Of a stretch of DNA of 64,000 bases, positions 44,285 through 63,955 are shown piece after piece. Source of the stretch: Setoptus koraiensis (taxonomy: Eukaryota; Animalia; Arthropoda); contig CM106586.1 in the NCBI GenBank assembly GCA_048013815.1, forward strand, positions 15,252,001-15,316,000, in the 5' to 3' direction. Numbering within the stretch: the first letter of the stretch is position 1; each line of letters begins with the position of its first letter. Under the pieces are notes generated by a model. The model worked only from the letters and a program-made list of their open reading frames with translations, did not search any database and was not told the DNA's origin. The translations under genes were made by a program, and so were the position numbers.

Positions 44285-44784
44285 NNNNNNNNNNNNNNNN
44301 NNNNNNNNNNNNNNNNNNNNNNNNNNNNNNNNNNNNNNNNNNNNNNNNNNNNNNNNNNNNNNNNNNNNNNNNNNNNNNNNNNNNNNNNNNNNNNNNNNNN
44401 NNNNNNNNNNNNNNNNNNNNNNNNNNNNNNNNNNNNNNNNNNNNNNNNNNNNNNNNNNNNNNNNNNNNNNNNNNNNNNNNNNNNNNNNNNNNNNNNNNNN
44501 NNNNNNNNNNNNNNNNNNNNNNNNNNNNNNNNNNNNNNNNNNNNNNNNNNNNNNNNNNNNNNNNNNNNNNNNNNNNNNNNNNNNNNNNNNNNNNNNNNNN
44601 NNNNNNNNNNNNNNNNNNNNNNNNNNNNNNNNNNNNNNNNNNNNNNNNNNNNNNNNNNNNNNNNNNNNNNNNNNNNNNNNNNNNNNNNNNNNNNNNNNNN
44701 NNNNNNNNNNNNNNNNNNNNNNNNNNNNNNNNNNNNNNNNNNNNNNNNNNNNNNNNNNNNNNNNNNNNNNNNNNNNNNNNNNNN
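44285..44784. other. assembly gap (500 N)
   Basis: Run of exactly 500 N, a placeholder-sized scaffold gap. Confidence 0.99.
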
Positions 44785-52913: not shown

Positions 52914-54479
52914 TCATGTCTCATCGGCATCTAAAAACGGCTGAGGGGCTCTCGTTAGATACCATTTGAGCCACAAGAAGAACTGATACATTCTCAACTT
53001 GAAGTCTATCCAGCGATGAGATGATCTGACTTTGAACCTGCACTTCCAATCTTTGCAGTTAGCCATGAGTCTTCTATGGACGTTTTCAGAACAATATCTT
53101 GTCATTATTATGAATGACATCTGTTGGCCTTTGGTCCCAAGTCGGGTTTCAATGCTCCTTAGTAGATCATTTGTTTTAAAAATGAGCAACAATTCTCTTG
53201 GAACACTTGATAATAATTGATTGATTTCATACATATATCTCGTGGCATAAGATTTTATTTCTTTTTCCTCTGATTGCATTGCTTTCCCGTCTATGTGCTC
53301 AGTTATACCGCGAACAACTGCCGACCAGGGTCTACCCGAAACAATACAGGCTAATATGCCATAGAGATCACCAACTCCTAATTCGCCGGCAAATTTTTTA
53401 ATATTATCCATGTCAGCCTGTATCAGGGCCAGCCAGAGACTGCTATAATTTTTCCTAAAGTTGTCACTCAAATGAGTGTACAGCCCGTGATCCAATAGAA
53501 TGATCTCGGCTCCTTTCTCTTCTGAATTTCTAACTAAGATATTTCCAGGGTGAGGGTCACAATGAACGTGTCCATGTTTAAATATCATGTCACAAAACAA
53601 AGTATCGAGACGTCTCGTTAGTTGATGCTTATCAATTCCTGAACTATCAATATATTTTGAGTCACTTATCATGCCACCAGTAACAAAATCCATAACTAAT
53701 ATTCTCGATGAAGTATGTTTCCAATGCACTTTTGGAATCACTAACCAACTGAAATTCTCTAATAGTTTACTAGTTTTGTCTGCATTCTCTCCTTCGTATG
53801 TGAAGTTAAGCTCAATTGGTAGATTCTTTTTAATTGTTTCGGCCAACCACAATAGTGAGAAGTTTGGAAATAGTTTAGCTATAACATTCACGGACAGGTC
53901 TATTGTAGCGAGATCGACGTAGCCATGTTTTTTGACACGTGGATGCTGCACTTTAACAGCCACCTCCTTGCCACTCTCTTTCAATTTAGCCCTGTGGACT
54001 TGGGCTATCGAGGCCACCCCAACTGGCTCTATATCGAACTCCTCAAACAGGTCTTCCAGTTCAGCTTTCAGGTCCTCCCGGATCACTTGCTTTATAGAAT
54101 CAATATCACTTCTTGGGGCTTGATTATGTAGGACAGATAATACATCGACATACTCTATAGGTACTAAATAAGGTAGTGCTGCTATATGTTGGCCGACTTT
54201 GATATAGATTCCACCATTGGCACGGCATAACTCCAGTAGGCTATTGGCAGATTTCCTATGGATCATTGACCATTGTTTCATTGATTTTTCCGAGAAATCA
54301 TCATACTCCTTGTTGTCAGTTAGTTTCTGATAATCATAAGCAATTTTGGACACTGTAAAAGCGGCACGTCCCAGCCTGGCAAAACCGATATCACGTAGAT
54401 TCCAATCATTATCCTTGAGGGCCAGGACACTTCCCACTCCAACGGCACCCAAAGTGCCGTATTTGATAAGTGATATCAT
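52914..54479 (-). CDS. ADCK1: AarF domain-containing protein kinase 1 (521 aa, intronless)
   Basis: ABC1/UbiB motifs GGIYIKVGQH, VASIAQVHRA, VAVKVQHP, HCDPHPGN and LLDHGLY. Confidence 0.93.
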   Translation of the reverse strand: MISLIKYGTLGAVGVGSVLALKDNDWNLRDIGFARLGRAAFTVSKIAYDYQKLTDNKEYDDFSEKSMKQWSMIHRKSANSLLELCRANGGIYIKVGQHIAALPYLVPIEYVDVLSVLHNQAPRSDIDSIKQVIREDLKAELEDLFEEFDIEPVGVASIAQVHRAKLKESGKEVAVKVQHPRVKKHGYVDLATIDLSVNVIAKLFPNFSLLWLAETIKKNLPIELNFTYEGENADKTSKLLENFSWLVIPKVHWKHTSSRILVMDFVTGGMISDSKYIDSSGIDKHQLTRRLDTLFCDMIFKHGHVHCDPHPGNILVRNSEEKGAEIILLDHGLYTHLSDNFRKNYSSLWLALIQADMDNIKKFAGELGVGDLYGILACIVSGRPWSAVVRGITEHIDGKAMQSEEKEIKSYATRYMYEINQLLSSVPRELLLIFKTNDLLRSIETRLGTKGQQMSFIIMTRYCSENVHRRLMANCKDWKCRFKVRSSHRWIDFKLRMYQFFLWLKWYLTRAPQPFLDADET

Positions 54480-55023
54480 AGGTATTAACGGTCAAGGAAT
54501 CCAGTTTAATCACTTTTGGTTAGAATCATGAAAGAATGGACATCAAGCAATTAGTTGGTACCAAAAATAGATTATGGTTCATCCAAATTCTGGATGATTA
54601 TTGAGATCAATGACGAAAAATAGTCACGTTGTTTCTACATTTTAAGCGCCAAATTTAGTTTTGTCGTGAAAGATTTTTCACGCGAAGATTTGCACACATA
54701 ATGAACAGCCTTTCTGACGCAATCTATCACCCATATGTTGTGTTCAACAAAGTTTAATGTGTTGATGCATTAGCACGTCCGTCGAAACAAGTCTATTTTG
54801 AATCTACTAGCAACTCAACTTGTAAACAATTCAGAAACCACTGTAGGAGTAACTAACAGAATGACCTACGTAGTATTAGATGAACAAAAGTATTGACTCA
54901 TGAATCGAGTCAAAATAACCGGACCTACAGACAAATAAAAATAGAAGAAGAATGGTCACATGGTAAACAGAATTATTATTATTACTCTCTACTATGCGTC
55001 GTTACTTAAAAATAACACATAAT

Positions 55024-56940
55024 TCAATCTTGGACGTCCCATATTTCTGCCAGGAAGTCAGGCAGACGTTTGTTTTTAACTTTCAGTGAGAAACACACGT
55101 TACTGTTGACTATGCCAAGTGCTCTCAATTCTGTCAATATGGATAACATCCGGGCAAAATAACATTGACCTGGTTCTCGATGAGATTCTACATAGGCTTG
55201 CATTAACGATAAGTAATAGTCTTGTATTGCCTCGACTTTCTTCGGGTCCCTTAAATTGGGCCGATCGCTAAAAATGGTGAGGGCTGTAAGAAGTGCATAC
55301 TCTGATTCATCCAATCTTAAAATATAGATACTTTTACAAAAGTTGAACATGGCATCGGCTATGTCACCAATGTAGGCGCTCCTATAATTGGCTCTTGTAA
55401 ATGGTTGGTTGTTTGCAAATAGTATACTATCAGTTTTGATATCATATTTTCTAGAGGATCGCAACATCATGACCTCACTAGCACATGCTTTTAATAACGT
55501 GATTTGATCTTCTCTGGTGAGCTGTTCGAATCCTTTAACACGTTTGGAAAATTCAACAATTAATTGTACAGTCAATATGGTCATTTCGGTAACCTGCCTG
55601 AATTGATTGATCTGTTCGTCTTCATTCTTATTATAGGGCTGTAGTTGCACAGATATAATGACGATACGATAATGATATATACACACATAGAAATATATGA
55701 GAGTGGAACGAAAGGTGTTGCGATTAATTTTGAGATACATTATGTGATATGCAAACAGCGTTGCTATCGCCTTATTATAGTGGGCGCCGACATATGTAAG
55801 CACATATGTATCATTATTATTATGAATACCTACCGCTATTTTGCTTAGATCCTCCGCAGATGGTGAATCAAACTCTGCTTGGTATCGCACTAGGTGCTCT
55901 ATCATGGCTATCTGGTCCGGAGATAGAAATTTGGGTGTATACCTATTGATTTCAGTGGGTGCCACAGAGGTGTACATGACTCCATTTGGGTCTTTGGTGA
56001 TACTTGAATTGGTTGTACTATCAGATTTAATAATATTGCCAGAATGAAAATTAGGATGATAATGTGGATTAATAGTAATAGTGGGCGTCGGTGAAACAAT
56101 CAATGGGGTGGTGGTAGTTTTGTCGTCGCATGATGACGATGATCTTGTAGATGTGGTTGAGTCTTGAGTTAGTTGGTGATTGTTGTGATGATAGTGTTGT
56201 TGCGTTGTTGTGTGTTGCATTGGTGTAATAATATTGTTGTTGTGTGTGTTATTGCCAATAATTGTAAGATCATGATTTGAACTTTGGTTTGCCGAGTGCA
56301 ATGTTGTTGTGGTGTTTGAGGGCACTGTGTAAGGTGAAGTATGAATTGTAACATTGTTATTGATAGCGTGCAGCTGCTGATGGGTAGCGTGGGGCGCCAG
56401 CGGGGGCGGCTGCGGCGACGGGTGATGCGGTATATGCTGCTGCTGGGGGTGTTGATGATGATTATTGATATTATTGTTTAGACCACTGTTGATATTATTG
56501 ATGATGGCGCTATTGTGAAGATGATGGTTGTTGGTGTTGGTGTTACCATTATTGTTGTTGTAGTTGGCGTTGTTGCTAGTGCTGTTGCTGTTGTTGTTGT
56601 GATTTGTTGTGGTTGGCGTGGTGGCCGTAGTTGAGTTTGGGGCCTGCTTTTGGGCCTGTTTCGATTGCCTCTTGATGGCGCACTGATACTCGGGCACAAC
56701 ACATTCGGGCCTCATTCCAACAGTGAGACACTTCTTGAGTCGACACTCTTGGCATTTCCTTCGCATGTACATGTCAATCTCACAATTGTTTCCATATTTG
56801 CACGTATATTGATTGTTTTTGGTGATGGATCGCCTGAAAAAGCCCTTGCATCCCTCGCAGGTGAGCGCGTTGTAATGGTAGCCGCTGGCCCTGTCGCCGC
56901 ATACAAGGCACAGCTCCTCTTGTTGCCGTACGTCGGCCAT
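55024..56940 (-). CDS. EcR: ecdysone receptor paralogue 1 (2 exons: 56940-55834, 55638-55024; 573 aa)
   Basis: [37 protein letters not shown]...MRPECVVPE and [17 protein letters not shown]...[17 protein letters not shown]...FLAEIWDV. A 195-nt gtaggt...acag intron lies in frame within the 638-aa ORF. Confidence 0.96.
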
Positions 56941-57200
56941 CGCTGCTGCTGCTGCTCGACTGATTTGTGTGGTATAAATATTGTGATATTAATTGATTGA
57001 ATTAATTTAATAATAATATTATATAATGGCGATAATAATAATAGTGACGCTGATAATAATGATAATAATGGCCGATAGTGTGTGCAGCCAGTGGGATAAT
57101 CGCTCAATTGGTTGGCCTGCGAATGATGCAAAATCAATTGTTCACCATTGGACGCCCGTATTTGACTGACTGGCTGTGTGTGTGTGTGTGTGTATGCGCG

Positions 57201-57228
57201 CTGGGTTCACTGTGATGTCGTTGCTCGC
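57201..57228. promoter_or_regulatory. conserved non-coding element A upstream of EcR paralogue 1
   Basis: ctgggttcactgtgatgtcgttgctcgc is 27/28 identical to 63851..63878 upstream of paralogue 2. Confidence 0.65.
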
Positions 57229-57643
57229 TAGATAAATGGCCAGCTTGCCTGTGTTTGCCTATACAGGCTGTTCAAAATGCGACCAGCACTATGGTTGCCG
57301 TAGCGCAGTGTGCAGTGAACAAGTTATATGCGTCATAGTCAAGTTGCTGAAGCTGCGAGCGTTGTGTGTGTGTGTGTGTGTGTTCGATTTCAATGTCGAA
57401 AGAATGTCCACTGGTCCAGCAAGCCGTCGGCAGCAGCAGCAGCAGCGCACTCTGATGATCAGACTACGATCATCAGCGCTGCTGTTGCACTGCACCAACC
57501 AACACAAGCGCACCAATTTCGCTTGCTCTGTACACTAGCACTATAGTACAGTGACTGTGGTGCAGTCAGTGTACACTGCACACACTGTGCAGTGCAGGGC
57601 TACACACACACCATTGGAGCAGCGCACACACATACACTGTGTA

Positions 57644-57644
<1 letters not shown>

Positions 57645-57684
<40 letters not shown>
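57645..57684. repeat. (CA)n microsatellite
   Basis: Perfect CA run. Confidence 0.95.
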
Positions 57685-57688
<4 letters not shown>

Positions 57689-58605
57689 TGATGGCCGTTC
57701 AAGATTAAATGGCACCACTGTGTGTGTGTGTGTGTGTGCGCTTAGCTTAGCGATGGCGGGGCACAGCAGTGGGGGTGGCACCATGGAAACACACACACAC
57801 ACACACGTTCGGTCGCATCGAACCAAGTGAGTGCGGCCGACATTGTAACACAGTCGCACAGCAACGGCAACAATAGCACACAACAACAACAACAAACATG
57901 GCTAGCAGCGGCAGCAGTGCACTAGTGCAAATTCAATGTCGTTGCGATTCGTTTTTCATCGTTTGCCATCGCACGCTCTCTTATAAAACAAGATGATGAT
58001 GAGTACAGGTAGGGTGAAGCAAATCCCCAGCCTTTTCACTTGTCTATGCTACACTCTGTATTACATTATTATTATTATACACACGACAATGGCAGTTGCG
58101 TCAGTGTCGGCCAGACACGGTGAGCGACGCAGCCAGAGACGCGGCCAGAGAGAGAGAGAGAGAGAAATCACAACTCGTTGGCCAGAGGACAAAGCTCCAG
58201 CATCAACTGGCGGCTGGCTGCATGTTACACCCAGGCCAGTTTCTGGCGACTGGCGTCCGACAACTGCAAACAGTTTCCACTGCAAACAGTTTGCAGCAGC
58301 AACAACATGTTCCAGCGAGCGTAACTAGCAGCTGCTGCCAGATTCACTTGTGGCCCAGCGGTGGCACAAGCACAACAACGAATATCTTGTTGCTATCGCT
58401 ACAGCCACCTATCCACCACCACCGGTTTGTGTCTGTGTGTCGGTGTGTCGGTGTGCGCAACAACAACATTCTGTGCCTACGTGGCAATAGCAATTCTCTC
58501 TCGCTGAACCGCAACACACACACACACACACACAACACCAACAACCGACTGCTAACAACTGCTGCGCTAGTACGTTGGCTCTTTCCATCTGACAGACTCT
58601 GACAG

Positions 58606-58607
<2 letters not shown>

Positions 58608-58643
<36 letters not shown>
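58608..58643. repeat. (GT)n microsatellite
   Basis: Perfect GT run. Confidence 0.95.
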
Positions 58644-58644
<1 letters not shown>

Positions 58645-59062
58645 ACAGCAATACTAATATTAACCAATACAATAATGTATTGCTGCTGCACAGGAAGACA
58701 CTTCCAATCAATCGAGCGATCACAGATCGCACAAGCAAACACATGCAGCTAGTTATAACACCTGTTCGCCCTGTGGCAATCCATTTATCACTACATATGT
58801 TCAACAGCGCACACACACACACACACGTAATACATAATAAACTCTATATGTAATGCCAGTGGCAGCCAGTAGACGGTGAATGGTGGAAAGTTCTTAATGA
58901 ACGACCAGCCCAACAACCCAGTCACTGTGGCCGCCCCACAAACAACAACAAACGGCTACGAACAAGTGCCAGTGTCTGCGCAATTCTAGCTAGCCAAATA
59001 GCTAACCAATAGCACATTAATATAAACGTTTCTGCTCTTTTTTCTGATTACTGTGCACTGTG

Positions 59063-59098
59063 TAAGTTGAAACAAAGACCACGACGACTTTCAAGGTC
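59063..59098. promoter_or_regulatory. conserved non-coding element B upstream of EcR paralogue 1 (contains TCAAGGTC)
   Basis: 30/36 identical to 63920..63955 upstream of paralogue 2. Confidence 0.55.
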
Positions 59099-59705
59099 TC
59101 TTTTGCCACTCTTTCTTTCTCTCTCTCCCTCGCTCTTTCTCTCTAGTTCTCGCTCGCTCTCTCACTCTCACTCGCTCTCTCATTGTGTAATGTGTGCGCA
59201 TGTGGGCTAATACTCATACTAGAGTAGATAAGGCGAATAAATGAACACATAATGAAAGTAAATATTGCCTACCATGAACTAATGTTACATAGGCAGCCTT
59301 TAAATACTATAAATAGAAAGCAATGGCATTAAATGCAGTTGCTTGTGCCAAGCTCTCTCTCTCTCTCACACACACACACAGATAAGCTTGTTAGTTGTTA
59401 GAGCCGGTTGTCTAGTTTGAATTGTCAATAGTGCAAACTCTAACCACACAACATATAAACTAAAAGAGACAGCAGAGAGAGAGAGAGAAAGAGAGAAAAC
59501 GACTCAACTCGACGAACAACCCTAATGATTCAATGGCCTATACCATTGCGCCTGTAGTTACTGCAAAATAAAATCACTGCTTACTCTTTTAACACTTTCT
59601 TGATGCGAGCTAACTAGTATTGTCGTCACAACTAAACTTTTTATTAGTAGATATCCATTTGTATTCAGATAAATATTTTCATAATAGTCAACTATTATCT
59701 CACAA

Positions 59706-59710
59706 ACACA

Positions 59711-59770
<60 letters not shown>
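59706..59770. repeat. (CA)n microsatellite, ~32 units
   Basis: Long CA run with one interruption. Confidence 0.95.
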
Positions 59771-59772
<2 letters not shown>

Positions 59773-60963
59773 ACTCAACCAATCAACTTGATATTGACTT
59801 GCTCAAGTATACATTTATTGACCGACAACTTTCCACCCAGAGTAGCTGGCGTTAGTGATGGTTTTAGTTCTATCATTTGCTTGCACAAAGACCTTTCTCT
59901 CTCTCTCTCTCTCCCTCTCCCTATCTTCCTCCTGGGTGTCACTACAAAGTCTCGCTAATCGAATTAAAAAAACGCTAGTCTTTATTTCATCCAACGAACA
60001 ACAACGAAATTGATTAATTCTACTTATGATCGACATTAAATAACACCACAATCTCTTACTGAATACTCTTAATTAAAACCAAATCCATTTAGCTTCGGAA
60101 CAAACTTGATGTCGATATCCTTGCTGATGCCAAGTTGTTCATGTTTTTTATAGTCTTATTTTCTGCATTGGCTTGTCATGCTATCGCGCAAAATCTCCCA
60201 ATCTCATCCAATCTAATACCAGAAATCTTCCATTTCAATGAATGCTCACTGCTTCTTGATTTATGTTCGTAATAAAGGGTTTCTTCCCAAGAAAACTACT
60301 TCACTATCACTTATCCAAAGATTTTTAGTTTATCTGAGTTAGCAATTCTTCATACAATGTGATGTAATCATCTCGTGTGCTTGTTGATTGCTTTTGAGAC
60401 TTTGTAAGCACAAGAAGTCAAGTTATCAAGGTTCAACATTTAATTATTATTGCTACCACATTGTCGAATATGCAATAATGCTGCTGATTCCACTGACTTG
60501 TGAGATCAGACGTCTGGCGACCATTGATAGGACGCCAAGATATGTTTATATTTGAGCGCTGAATAAACAGATTTCACTATTCGGTTTATATAGGTCATGG
60601 TGAAAGCTTAGAAAATGAAATTGTTGTTGTTGCTTTTTTTTAAGAAGAACCATCTTTCATTTTTTTTTCAAATGAATACGATGCGAATAAAAGATTTGAA
60701 CAAGTAATTGTTGTTAATAATTATTGTTTGTGTTTATATTATGTGTGTGATGATAGCCGGTAACTGGCATTTCATAGTAACTTGTGTGGAGATCTTTCGC
60801 ACTATTAAAACAATTTAGTGTGAGGCATGGAGGGTGGCGGATATCAGGGGGCCAATAATTGATGAATGACTTGTTTTGTTTTATCACCTTTATACTATGT
60901 ATTTGATTGTTGAAACTCTCTACTAAGGGTCTTTACATTAATTAAAAAAATATATCACATATT

Positions 60964-62965
60964 TCAATCTTTGACGTCCCATATTTCTGCCAGGAAGTCT
61001 GGTAAACGTTTGTTTTTGACCTTTAGTGAGAAACACACGTTACTATTAATTATACCAAGTGCTCTCAATTCTGTCAATATGGATAACATCTTGGCAAAAT
61101 AACATTGACTTGCTTCGCGTCTTGGCGAAGATTCCACATAGGCTTGCATTAACGATAAGTAATAGTCTTGTATTGCCTCTACTTTCTGGGGATCCCTTAG
61201 GTTTGGCCTGTCACTGAAAATTGTGAGGGCCGTAAGAAGTGCATACTCCGATTCGTCTAATTTCAAAACGTAGATACTTTTACAAAAGTTGAACATGGCA
61301 TCGGCTATGTCACCAATGTAGGCGCTCCTATAATTGGCTCTTGTAAATGGTTGGTTGTTTGCAAATAGTATACTATCCGTTTTAAAATCATATTTCCTTG
61401 ACGATCTCAACATCATGACCTCACTAGCGCATGCTTTTAATAATGTGATTTGATCTTCTCTGGTGAGCTGTTCGAATCCTCTGACTTTTTTGGCAAATTC
61501 AACAATTAATTGTACAGTCAGTATGGTCATCTCGGTGACCTGCCTGAATTGATTGATTTGTTCGTCCTCATTCTTATTGTATGGCTAAAGATAGGTAAAT
61601 GTAATTGAATAAACATGAAAGGAGAGAGAGAGAGAATTAGAGAGATTAGTCTTTTGTTTCTAGCTAATAATGAGGACATAATGAGAATATTGACTTGTTG
61701 GACCCTCATTCGACAAGTGTGGGCCATTTTATTTCACTTACTGCTATCTTGCTCAGGTCCTCGGGTGATGGTGAATCAAATTCCGCCTGATAATGAACTA
61801 AATGTTTAATCATGGCAATCTGTTCTAAAGTGAGAGATTTCTGTGGATACCTATTATTAAGATCGGTGGCGATTGTTGTTGTGTACATGGGGCTTGCATG
61901 ATCTGCTGCTGTAATATTATTGACAGCATTTGTTGCATGTTCATCATTTGTGGTATGTGTCTTGTTGTTTGAAACAGCAATGATATTATTAGCGGAATGA
62001 TAATTTTGATTGATAGCTGCTAGGTTGTTTGGTGTCGGCGATATAATAAAAGGAGTTGTAGTAGTTGTTGTTGTTTTATCGTCACAAGACGAAGACGATC
62101 TAGTAGACGTTGTTGAGTCTTGATTATGATTATGGTGAAGATTATGATTATTATGATGATGTTGCTGTTGATAATGTTGGTGCGAGCTTGCAGCTGTTGG
62201 TAATGATGTTTGGCCAACAATGTTGATATCTTGATGATTTAATTGTGTTGTCGTTCTACTATTGACATTTGTTGTTGTGACGGTGTTTGAATTAGCTGCT
62301 GCTGCTGTTATTGGCCCTAAAGATGGCGTAATATAGGGTGAAGTGTGATGGGCAGGATGATGAGCTTGGTGATTGTTGTGTAGATGATGGTGATGCTGAT
62401 GTGGATTTAGGTGTGGTGGTTGCTGTTGATTGGGTTGATGTTGTTGGTGGTGTGATTGGTGTTGGTGGTGGTGTTGTTGTTGCTGCTGTTGTTGATGATT
62501 GAGGTGTTGTGCATGAAGCGAATGTTGTTGGTTGGCTGGATGGTGGATGCCATTGTTGATATTGTTGATGATAGCACTGTTGGTAGTATTGTAATTATTA
62601 TTATTATTGTTGTTGTTGTTGTTGTGATTTGTTGTGGTTGGCGTGGTGGCCGTAGTTGAGTTTGGGGCCTGCTTTTGGGCCTGTTTCGATTGCCTCTTGA
62701 TGGCGCACTGATACTCGGGCACAACACATTCGGGCCTCATTCCAACAGTGAGACACTTCTTGAGTCGACACTCTTGGCATTTCCTTCTCATGTACATGTC
62801 AATCTCACATTTGTTTCCATATTTGCACGTATATTGATTGTTTTTAGTGATGGATCGCCTGAAAAAGCCCTTGCATCCCTCGCAGGTGAGCGCATTATAA
62901 TGGTAGCCGCTGGCCCTGTCGCCGCATACGAGGCACAGCTCCTCTTGTTGCCTGGTGTCGGTCAT
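60964..62965 (-). CDS. EcR: ecdysone receptor paralogue 2 (2 exons: 62965-61742, 61584-60964; 614 aa)
   Basis: [15 protein letters not shown] 157-nt gtaagt...ttag intron joins DLSKIA|[20 protein letters not shown], at the same position as in paralogue 1. The intact LBD ends [10 protein letters not shown]. Confidence 0.96.
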
Positions 62966-63466: not shown

Positions 63467-63850
63467 CTGGCTGGTTGGTGTGTCGACGAGGCCGGGAGTC
63501 GCGGCCGGCCCAACGAGAGGCGAATTGGATTAAATTAATGATATTATATAAATTAATAATAACGACGAAATAATGATAATATTAATAGAAATGGTTGCTT
63601 GCTCGGCGGTAGCGGCACTGCAATGAATTTGTAGCTCAACTCAACTCAACTCAACTCAACTAACAAAGTTCGCTTGTGTGTGCGCTGATAAAATTCGATT
63701 GTTCTGCTAGTTTGTCGCTGCTGTCTGTTGCTGCTGTTTGTTCGATGATCGTATATTCGATGATCAAATCATTCGATCGTCGTCGTTCGATCCACTCGCT
63801 AGGCTAGCGAACTAATACTGTCTCACTGAAAATGTATGAGAGCGCGCGCT

Positions 63851-63955
63851 CTGGGTTCACTTTGATGTCGTTGCTCGCCAACAAACTCTGACTGTGACTG
63901 GCTGTGTGTGTGTGTGATATAAGTTGAAACGACGACGCCAACCACTTTCAAGGTC
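63851..63955. promoter_or_regulatory. cluster of conserved non-coding elements upstream of EcR paralogue 2
   Basis: Elements A (63851-63878) and B (63920-63955) plus tgactggctgtgtg (63895), all shared with the region upstream of paralogue 1. Confidence 0.6.

What the first reader, a model, noticed from the sequence alone, without database searches (positions are those of the whole stretch)
55024..62965. Tandem duplication of two intact, diverging ecdysone receptor genes
Seen: two complete EcR genes on the minus strand, ~6 kb apart, with the same single intron position. Their LBDs differ by about a dozen substitutions plus a 2-aa indel (HREPG vs SPRREAS), and their introns, hinges and UTRs are largely unalignable, so this is not an assembly haplotype artefact. 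Known: EcR (NR1H1) is single-copy in most arthropods and diversifies through alternative A/B isoforms, although duplicates exist in some lineages such as Daphnia. Inference: a local duplication maintained by selection, possibly a sub-functionalised two-receptor moulting-hormone system.
Basis: partly seen in the sequence, partly recalled or inferred. Interest (0 to 1): 0.75.

Follow-up and report, generated by a model that had tools for sequence, protein, structure and literature searches.

The report
Tandem ecdysone receptor pair, gall mite
A tiny plant mite carries two working-looking copies of the moulting-hormone receptor gene side by side. Their hormone-binding and DNA-binding parts are kept almost the same, partly by copying between the copies, so this is a real but fairly ordinary gene duplication.

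Summary
Two intact EcR (NR1H1) genes lie head-to-tail on the minus strand, 6,025 nt start to start, inside one gap-free stretch. Each has a DBD+hinge exon and an LBD exon, split by a phase-0 GT..AG intron at the same codon. The genome is most likely the eriophyoid mite Setoptus koraiensis, judged from contig lengths and a published N50.

Both copies are under strong purifying selection. LBD exon dN/dS is 0.07, and it stays at or below about 0.1 where synonymous sites are saturated. Both long low-complexity hinges remain open.

Synonymous differences form a sharp mosaic. Perfect 174-nt and 107-nt tracts sit next to saturated stretches (permutation p = 5e-5). I read this as an old duplication whose conserved domains are repeatedly homogenised by gene conversion, not a simply "diverging" pair.

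All eleven ecdysteroid-contact positions I could place are the same residue in both copies. Divergence lies in the hinge, intron, UTRs and flanks. Any division of labour is therefore more likely in expression than in ligand choice.

The closest relatives, and the published Aculops genome, have one EcR. Multi-copy EcR is already documented in mesostigmatid mites and Daphnia. This is a new member of a known kind, of moderate interest. Expression and read-level support could not be checked. This scan noted conversion between other duplicates in this genome.

The parts
55834..56940 (-). EcR copy A, exon 1. It holds the start codon, the C4 zinc-finger DBD, a long N/Q/H/T-rich hinge, and LBD helices H1-H2 (369 aa).
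   Evidence: ORF and sequence. Pfam zf-C4 at 1.3e-31. H1-H2 aligns to EcR structures.
55639..55833 (-). Copy A intron: 195 nt, GT..AG, phase 0, open in frame.
   Evidence: Sequence read. Barely alignable to the copy B intron (z = 2.4).
55024..55638 (-). EcR copy A, exon 2. It holds LBD helices H3-H12 with AF-2 (204 aa plus stop).
   Evidence: Pfam Hormone_recep at 8.9e-23. PDB EcR at 2.6e-75.
61742..62965 (-). EcR copy B, exon 1. It holds the start codon, DBD, hinge and H1-H2 (408 aa).
   Evidence: Pfam zf-C4 at 1.9e-31.
61585..61741 (-). Copy B intron: 157 nt, GT..AG, phase 0, at the same codon position as in copy A.
   Evidence: Sequence read.
60964..61584 (-). EcR copy B, exon 2. It holds LBD H3-H12 (206 aa plus stop) and is the faster-evolving copy.
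   Evidence: Pfam at 5.9e-24. PDB EcR at 1.6e-75. Tree branch length 0.056 against 0.013 for A.
56589..56762 (-). A 174-nt tract perfectly identical to 62614-62787. It covers the second zinc finger, the C-terminal extension and the start of the hinge. Proposed recent gene-conversion tract.
   Evidence: Longest exact match. Zero synonymous differences in codons 71-112. Run test p = 5e-5.
62614..62787 (-). Partner in copy B of the 174-nt identical tract.
55325..55431 (-). A 107-nt tract in the LBD exon perfectly identical to 61271-61377. Proposed second conversion tract.
   Evidence: pS is 0.05 in codons 69-102 against 0.76 in codons 103-136. Within-exon run tests give p = 0.003 and 0.0005.
61271..61377 (-). 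Partner in copy B of the 107-nt identical tract.
57196..57228 (-). Conserved 33-nt upstream element of copy A, 256-288 nt before the ATG. Candidate cis-regulatory or leader element.
   Evidence: It is the only similarity in otherwise unalignable flanks. Its 28-nt core occurs only at these two places in the 48.8-Mb assembly, allowing up to 3 mismatches.
63846..63878 (-). The same element upstream of copy B, 881-913 nt before the ATG.
54984..55023 (-). First ~40 nt of the copy A 3' UTR, still alignable to 60915-60963 of copy B.
   Evidence: The blastn segment 54984-55640 against 60915-61586 runs past both stop codons. Sequences shown.

Best explanation
These are two functional ecdysteroid-receptor paralogues. 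They arose by an old DNA-level tandem duplication in the lineage of this eriophyoid mite, probably Setoptus koraiensis, after it split from the eriophyoid-like lineages that keep a single intronless EcR.

Each gene encodes a receptor with no A/B domain: a DBD, a long disordered hinge and an LBD. By homology, each should pair with one of the genome's two RXR/USP proteins, bind an ecdysteroid and act at ecdysone response elements.

Purifying selection acts on both copies. Short-tract gene conversion between the neighbouring copies keeps the DBD and parts of the LBD almost identical. The hinge, intron, UTRs and promoter regions, where conversion cannot start, have diverged beyond alignment.

The likely functional difference is therefore when, where or how much each copy is made, or some hinge-dependent property. 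It is unlikely to be which hormone is bound.

Shown here: gene structures, family membership, copy number, selection, the mosaic of divergence, and identical pocket residues. Inferred: conversion as the cause of the mosaic, expression of both copies, the division of labour, and the species name.
For: - Structure and family.
- Only two EcR LBDs in the assembly.
- No gap between the copies, and similarity confined to coding parts plus two short elements.
- Selection: LBD exon dS 0.50 with dN/dS 0.069, and DBD dN/dS 0.14.
- In the saturated segments (H1-H2 and LBD codons 103-136), pooled pN is about 0.08 against pS of about 0.8. This is incompatible with either copy drifting neutrally since the duplication.
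- Mosaic: pS is 0.00-0.08 in DBD codons 29-112, 0.84 in H1-H2, and 0.05 then 0.76 in adjacent LBD windows. Fisher tests give 4e-5 to 5e-11. The longest identical run is 52 synonymous codons (p = 5e-5) and the runs test gives p < 5e-5. Perfect tracts are 174 and 107 nt.
- Tree: A and B are sisters (94/86), inside a 100/99 clade with 22 unnamed sequences (those inspected are single-ORF, intronless EcRs); branch lengths are A 0.013 and B 0.056.
- A relative's contig (L026 and L027 are the same sequence) shows one EcR within about 8-10 kb on either side; L028, a whole 13.4-kb contig, also carries one.
- Aculops lycopersici is published with one EcR and two RXRs (PMC7738191).
- Two RXR/USP loci are present in this genome.
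- Pocket positions are the same in both copies.
Against: - There are no expression data, so one copy could be silent.
- Conversion from a live copy could hide decay of a dead one in the converted tracts. The saturated tracts argue against this.
- The mosaic could in part reflect uneven constraint on synonymous sites. It could also reflect short-read polishing of a CLR assembly across paralogues (assembly method in PMC11920263). Raw reads were not available.
- No close relative is available to show conversion by tree incongruence or to date the duplication.
The two-contig total of 48.76 Mb differs slightly from the published 47 Mb.
Confidence: 0.7

Rival explanations
1. Redundant dosage pair. 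Both copies are expressed in the same way and are kept for the amount of receptor they supply. Gene conversion simply maintains two equivalent genes, and there is no division of labour.
For: DBD 97% and LBD exon 93% identical, with the same pocket residues. Conversion tracts are present. A shared 33-nt upstream element and a shared start of the 3' UTR could mean shared regulation.
Against: The promoter-side flanks, introns and most of the UTRs are unalignable. The hinges differ in length and sequence. The shared element sits at very different distances from the ATG, 256 against 881 nt. Copy B evolves about four times faster in the LBD.
Confidence: 0.2
2. One copy is a silent or decaying gene whose open frame is kept up only by conversion from the working copy.
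For: Conversion tracts exist. Copy B carries most of the derived LBD changes and a 2-aa insertion. There is no expression evidence.
Against: Where synonymous sites are saturated, meaning no recent conversion, amino-acid change is still rare (pN about 0.08). Both hinges of roughly 250-290 aa stay open through many indels. Both copies keep GT..AG splice sites, start and stop codons. All changes in B are conservative.
Confidence: 0.06
3. Assembly artefact: two haplotypes, or sequences from two individuals or species in the pooled sample, placed in tandem.
For: The assembly came from pooled mites, CLR reads, purge_dups and Hi-C scaffolding (PMC11920263).
Against: There is no N gap between the copies; the nearest gap is 10 kb away. 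The flanks are not duplicated: the ADCK-like gene is downstream of A only. Divergence is far beyond allelic, with saturated synonymous sites and unalignable introns and hinges.
Confidence: 0.03
4. One compound locus. Transcripts starting at copy B read through and splice B exon 1 to A exon 2, giving chimeric receptors in the manner of alternative cassettes.
For: The two genes have the same orientation and are 4 kb apart. Both introns are phase 0 at the same codon, so a B-exon1/A-exon2 junction would stay in frame.
Against: B exon 2 has its own stop codon and a conserved start of the 3' UTR. A has its own ATG and its own copy of the upstream element. There is no transcript evidence of any kind.
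Confidence: 0.05

Closest known systems
Arthropod ecdysone receptor EcR (NR1H1), for example the Heliothis, Tribolium, Bemisia and Bovicola EcR LBD structures (1R1K, 2NXX, 1Z5X, 4OZT)
   Same: C4 zinc-finger DBD with a CEGCKG P-box. The LBD matches EcR structures at 1e-70 to 1e-75, well above LXR and FXR. Pocket and AF-2 residues are conserved. RXR/USP partners are present in the genome.
   Different: There is no A/B (AF-1) domain. The hinge is very long and low in complexity. The position equivalent to Heliothis E309 is Asp in both copies. There are two genes instead of one.
Single-copy EcR of eriophyoid mites (Aculops lycopersici, PMC7738191) and the unnamed intronless relatives found here (P0001-P0014, L026-L028)
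   Same: The same clade in the tree (100/99). The same start position just before the DBD. The same long Q/H/P/N-rich hinge. Compact, intron-poor genomic context.
   Different: Those are single-copy. The unnamed relatives inspected here are also single open reading frames. Here the gene is duplicated in tandem and keeps one intron in the LBD.
Multi-copy EcR in other lineages: Daphnia EcR-A/EcR-B (named as duplicated in PMC13449613), three EcR genes in Neoseiulus cucumeris (PMC6902594), and two EcR-like genes in Varroa and Galendromus
   Same: More than one intact EcR gene in one genome. Within mites, the mesostigmatid pairs are also both intact.
   Different: The mesostigmatid duplication is old and shared between genera, with well-separated paralogue clades. 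Here the copies are adjacent, lineage-specific in the tree, and partly homogenised.
Concerted evolution of tandem paralogues by gene conversion (classic examples are globin and heat-shock gene pairs; the same is noted in this genome for twin EGFR genes by an earlier finding)
   Same: Neighbouring paralogues show sharply bounded identical tracts inside otherwise old divergence. The tracts are confined to conserved coding sequence.
   Different: Here it affects a hormone receptor, and it could not be confirmed with orthologues from a sister species.

Membership tests
EcR (NR1H1) nuclear receptor | C4-type two-zinc-finger DNA-binding domain with a CEGCKG P-box | tested here: met
   Pfam PF00105 at 1.3e-31 and 1.9e-31. 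The motif [11 protein letters not shown] is read in both copies.
EcR (NR1H1) nuclear receptor | Ligand-binding domain closer to EcR than to any other NR1H or other nuclear receptor | tested here: met
   PDB search: EcR chains at 2.6e-75 to 3.7e-69, next best LXR at 4e-44 and FXR at 3e-30. The best database hits that carry a source name are called ecdysone receptor or are annotated as such; a few are unnamed or hypothetical.
EcR (NR1H1) nuclear receptor | Placement within the arthropod EcR clade | tested here: met
   The LBD-exon tree nests both copies among acariform EcRs with 100/99 support for the local clade. No non-EcR outgroup was included, so this shows position among EcRs and not exclusion of other NR1H members. 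The PDB ranking covers that point.
EcR (NR1H1) nuclear receptor | Conserved ecdysteroid-contact residues (Heliothis T343, T346, M380, M381, R383, A398, Y408, N504, C508, W526, E309) | tested here: met
   The residue list is recalled from the Heliothis EcR-ponasterone A structure paper. I placed the numbering on the HMMER alignments, where each number lands on the expected residue type. Ten positions are identical in both copies. The E309 equivalent is Asp in both.
EcR (NR1H1) nuclear receptor | Heterodimer partner RXR/USP encoded in the same genome | tested here: met
   Two RXR/USP loci were found. One is at C1:11398552, a 487-aa ORF matching RXR-alpha at 7e-94 and USP at 2e-57. The other is at C1:18980492, a DBD exon matching USP at 6e-45.
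EcR (NR1H1) nuclear receptor | Ecdysteroid binding and hormone-dependent transactivation | not testable with these tools
   This needs ligand-binding or reporter assays for each copy with each RXR.
EcR (NR1H1) nuclear receptor | N-terminal A/B domain with isoform-specific exons (typical, not strictly defining) | tested here: not met
   The ATG lies 9-10 codons before the first Cys in both copies, and similarity between copies stops at the ATG. The full-length intronless relatives inspected start at the same position, and L027 has an in-frame stop 12 codons upstream. tblastn with chelicerate A/B regions finds only compositional hits inside the hinge.
Tandem paralogues under gene conversion (concerted evolution) | Significantly clustered silent differences, with long identical tracts beside saturated tracts | tested here: met
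   p = 5e-5 for the longest run, p < 5e-5 for runs, and 174-nt and 107-nt perfect tracts.
Tandem paralogues under gene conversion (concerted evolution) | Tree incongruence along the gene when orthologues of each copy from a sister species are included | not testable with these tools

The most novel reading that the evidence does not exclude
Eriophyoid EcR has lost the A/B domain, through which other arthropods make stage- and tissue-specific EcR isoforms. In this lineage, whole-gene duplication has replaced isoform splicing. Two receptors with the same DNA-binding and hormone-binding cores but different promoters and hinges, combined with two RXRs, would give up to four heterodimers that divide the moulting and reproductive roles. 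Gene conversion would hold the cores together while regulation diverges. Earlier notes of this scan report a second copy of Blimp-1 in this genome, and I saw a second HR4-like DBD, so duplication may extend to several steps of the ecdysone cascade.
Probability: 0.3. Interest if true: 0.55.

Novelty: new member of a known kind. Interest (0 to 1): 0.35.

Why it matters
Eriophyoid mites are known for extreme gene loss, including losses of nuclear receptors or of their ligand-binding domains. A retained duplicate of the central moulting-hormone receptor runs against that trend and is not mentioned in the papers I could find on eriophyoid genomes.

It offers a compact natural test of how a hormone receptor pair is kept. 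The DBD and LBD cores are tied together by selection and conversion, while the regulatory and hinge regions are free to diverge.

It also matters in practice. EcR is a target for moulting-disruptor acaricides and for RNAi, and two near-identical targets with separate regulation would affect both.

The finding is not a new kind of system. Multi-copy EcR is already recorded in Daphnia and in mesostigmatid mites.

Tried and rejected
The long Logan contigs of the nearest relatives could not be fetched. I used one metagenome scan instead.
- I first took the genome for the broad mite Polyphagotarsonemus latus (49.1 Mb in two contigs, PMC11233664). I rejected this because its contigs are 30.9 and 18.2 Mb, whereas this assembly has 24.22 and 24.53 Mb. 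The latter matches the N50 of 24.53 Mb for two-chromosome Setoptus koraiensis.
- The search for an upstream A/B-coding exon, using chelicerate A/B regions against 54-74 kb, gave only low-complexity hits inside the hinges.
- I tried to read the 33-nt upstream element as an ecdysone response element. It has one TGAACC half-site but no convincing palindrome, so I dropped the idea. The element is absent from the relatives' loci.
- The exact-sequence look-up of the neighbouring ADCK-like protein, meant to name the organism, found nothing in the collection.
- Literature searches for an EcR duplication in eriophyoids, Setoptus or the newest eriophyoid preprint found nothing.
All searches were run exon by exon by reference. 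The one exception used the unspliced read-through ORF of copy A by reference, scored on exon 2 only. A tree or fold of the joined protein was left out for that reason.
- No structure prediction was run, because the 1e-75 sequence matches to solved EcR LBDs made it unnecessary.

Full report
**What is there.** On the minus strand of the window lie two genes of the same build.
- Copy A has exon 1 at 56940..55834 (369 aa), a 195-nt GT..AG intron at 55833..55639, and exon 2 at 55638..55024 (204 aa plus stop).
- Copy B has exon 1 at 62965..61742 (408 aa), a 157-nt intron at 61741..61585, and exon 2 at 61584..60964 (206 aa plus stop).
- In both, the intron sits in phase 0 between ...DLSKIA and PYNKNED..., that is, between LBD helices H2 and H3.
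- The copy A intron happens to be open in frame, which is why the mechanical ORF list shows one 638-aa ORF.
- Pfam finds the C4 zinc finger in both first exons and the hormone-receptor LBD in both second exons.
- Solved structures rank EcR first at about 1e-75, well ahead of LXR (4e-44) and FXR.
- The assembly contains only these two EcR-type LBDs.

**Whose genome.**
- The assembly has two contigs of 24,221,962 and 24,533,333 bases.
- The window holds one 500-N scaffold gap at 44285-44784.
- A published chromosome-level assembly of the eriophyoid mite Setoptus koraiensis has two chromosomes and an N50 of 24.53 Mb. It was built from CLR reads with Flye, short-read polishing, purge_dups and 3D-DNA (PMC11920263).
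- I therefore take the genome to be S. koraiensis. This is an inference from sizes, and the published anchored total (47 Mb) is slightly smaller than 48.76 Mb.
- An earlier idea, the broad mite P. latus, fails on contig lengths.
- Protein searches agree with a divergent acariform mite. The best hits (77% in the LBD) are unnamed metagenome or SRA proteins. Oribatids score 69%, and other named chelicerates about 62-67%.

**Is the duplication real.**
- A self-comparison of 48-74 kb, with 10 kb added beyond the window, finds similarity only in four places: the LBD exon plus about 40-49 nt of 3' UTR (88%), the first 417 nt of the coding sequence (92%, ending exactly at the ATG), the H1-H2 end of exon 1 (74%), and a 33-nt upstream element.
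- No flanking gene is duplicated. The single-exon ADCK-like gene at 52914-54479 lies downstream of copy A only.
- There is no gap between the copies.
- Introns and 5' flanks are at or near the level of shuffled sequence.
- Alleles or misplaced haplotigs cannot give this picture. The shared intron shows a DNA-level duplication, not a retrocopy.

**Selection.** These are Nei-Gojobori counts, exon by exon.

| Segment | dS or pS | dN or pN | dN/dS |
|---|---|---|---|
| LBD exon | dS 0.50 | dN 0.035 | 0.069 |
| DBD codons 1-112 | dS 0.11 | dN 0.015 | 0.14 |
| Last 35 codons of exon 1 (H1-H2) | pS 0.84 (saturated) | pN 0.13 | - |
| LBD codons 103-136 | pS 0.76 | 3 replacement changes | - |

- In the saturated segments pooled, pN is about 0.08 against pS of about 0.8. 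If either copy had drifted neutrally since the duplication, replacement divergence there would be several times higher.
- Both hinges (about 250-290 aa of N/Q/H/T-rich sequence) stay open through many indels.
- I conclude that both genes are maintained by selection.

**The mosaic.**
- Silent differences are far from evenly spread. DBD codons 71-112 have none, H1-H2 is saturated, and inside the LBD exon a window with pS 0.05 is followed by one with pS 0.76.
- Fisher tests between segments give 4e-5 to 5e-11.
- Among 314 codons with the same amino acid and a degenerate third position, the longest identical run is 52 (p = 5e-5). The number of runs is lower than in all 20,000 permutations. Within the LBD exon alone the two tests give p = 0.003 and 0.0005.
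- The longest perfect matches are 174 nt (56589-56762 with 62614-62787, running into the poorly conserved start of the hinge) and 107 nt (55325-55431 with 61271-61377).
- The simplest reading is an old duplication, with silent sites saturated where untouched, plus repeated short-tract gene conversion confined to the parts still similar enough to pair.
- Two caveats apply. Uneven constraint on silent sites could contribute. Short-read polishing across paralogues could create false identity, and only the raw reads can settle that.
- Earlier notes of this scan describe conversion between other duplicate pairs in this genome. I did not test those notes, and I treat them only as being consistent with this reading.

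**When.**
- In an LBD-exon tree of 50 EcRs, the two copies are sisters (94/86).
- Together they are sister to 22 unnamed sequences (100/98). The joint clade has 100/99 support and a long stem.
- The sister relation also holds by eye in the unconverted H1-H2 segment: 26/35 identical between the copies and about a third identical to the relatives.
- The relatives are single open reading frames with no intron. The full-length ones start at the same place (M-A-N-x-T-Q-Q-D-E-L-C against [11 protein letters not shown]).
- On the relative's contig recovered as L026/L027 (the same sequence twice), there is one EcR within about 8-10 kb on either side. The 13.4-kb contig L028 also carries one. Neither has an ADCK neighbour.
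- Aculops lycopersici is published with one EcR and two RXRs (PMC7738191).
- The duplication therefore arose on the branch leading to this species, after the split from those lineages, but long enough ago to saturate silent sites.
- I infer that the unnamed relatives are Eriophyidae. This was not shown.

**What differs between the copies.**
- Polarising the 13 LBD-exon substitutions and the indel with outgroups shows that copy B carries most of the derived states: I67F, I106V, V177I, Q203K, P156A and the two-residue insertion in the H9-H10 loop. All are conservative. This matches its branch, which is four times longer.
- I placed the Heliothis EcR numbering on the HMMER alignments. The residue list is recalled from the ponasterone A complex paper. 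Each number lands on the expected residue type, which checks the register.
- On that basis, T343, T346, M380, M381, R383, A398, Y408, N504, C508 and W526 are unchanged in both copies. The E309 equivalent is Asp in both.
- Two differences, I67F and V177I, sit next to pocket residues but are not contact positions.
- The AF-2 helix is the same in both.
- Nothing in the sequence suggests different ligands.
- The large differences are in the hinge, the intron, most of the UTRs and everything upstream. The exception upstream is a 33-nt element whose 28-nt core occurs only at these two places in the assembly. It lies 256 nt before the ATG in A and 881 nt before it in B.

**No A/B domain.**
- Similarity between the copies ends at the ATG.
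- The full-length intronless relatives inspected start at the same position, and L027 has a stop 12 codons upstream.
- Chelicerate A/B regions find nothing upstream.
- This clade's EcR seems to lack the N-terminal domain through which other arthropods make isoforms. That makes gene duplication an attractive substitute, but this is speculation.

**Partners.**
- A scan for the zinc-finger family finds about 18 receptor DBDs in the genome.
- Two are RXR/USP, as in Aculops and many arachnids (PMC13449613).

**Comparison with what is known.**
- A 2026 survey of moulting genes names EcR duplication only for daphnids (PMC13449613).
- However, three EcR genes are reported for the phytoseiid Neoseiulus cucumeris (PMC6902594).
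- My tree also shows an old duplication shared by Varroa and Galendromus.
- I found no mention of an EcR duplicate in eriophyoids.
- The finding is thus a new, lineage-specific instance of a known phenomenon. Its points of interest are the clean conversion mosaic and the contrast with the gene-loss trend of these mites.

**Limits.**
- There are no expression data, no raw reads and no close relative.
- The exons were never joined. Searches were run exon by exon by reference, and the joined-protein tree and fold were left out.
- The contig is not human.

**Verdict.** I class it as a new member of a known kind, with interest about 0.35.

Noticed in passing
G000:C2:2687049-2687252 and C2:2694039-2694242 (loci L015, L016): A second tandem pair of nuclear-receptor genes, 7 kb apart on the same strand, with identical HR4/GCNF-like DBDs. 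The 3.2-kb loci align only in patches (96% over 649 nt, 94% over 237 nt). The existence of a second copy seems not to have been noted.
   Followed up: partly
G000:C1:11398552-11398758 (L013, ORF 1123-2586) and C1:18980492-18980698 (L008): Two RXR/USP genes. One is a 487-aa single-ORF RXR with DBD and LBD (7e-94 to human RXR-alpha). The other was seen only as a USP-like DBD exon.
   Followed up: partly
window 57196-57228 and 63846-63878 (minus strand): A 33-nt element conserved upstream of both EcR copies. Its 28-nt core is unique to these two places in the assembly. In both copies it lies next to a (CA)n run and a GCCAGTCA motif, but in a different order. Its function is unknown, and it has no convincing ecdysone-response palindrome.
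   Followed up: partly
window 56911-56940 and 62936-62965; loci L026/L027 8463-10352: EcR of this clade appears to have no A/B domain, because the start codon lies 9-10 codons before the first zinc-finger Cys. The relatives' EcR genes are intronless single ORFs, whereas this species keeps one LBD intron.
   Followed up: partly
tree (P0041/P0047 against P0063/P0066): Varroa and Galendromus each have two EcR-like proteins that form two well-supported paralogue clades. This indicates an old EcR duplication in Mesostigmata.
   Followed up: no
window 44285-44784: A 500-N scaffold gap, the only one in the window. It is typical of Hi-C scaffolding and lies 10 kb from copy A.
   Followed up: yes
window 52914-54479 (minus strand): A single-exon 521-aa ORF 545 nt downstream of copy A that looks like an ABC1/ADCK-type kinase. 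This label comes from reading the translation only and was not checked with Pfam. It is not duplicated with EcR, and its exact sequence is absent from the protein collection.
   Followed up: partly
window 57200-59800: The 4-kb spacer between the copies is full of (CA)n/(TG)n microsatellites, which produce many spurious Cys/Val/His/Thr-rich ORFs on both strands.
   Followed up: no
window 56000-56100 and 61900-62000 (hinge): A block of about 20 aa ([20 protein letters not shown]) is identical in both otherwise diverged hinges. It may be a functional hinge motif or another conversion patch.
   Followed up: no
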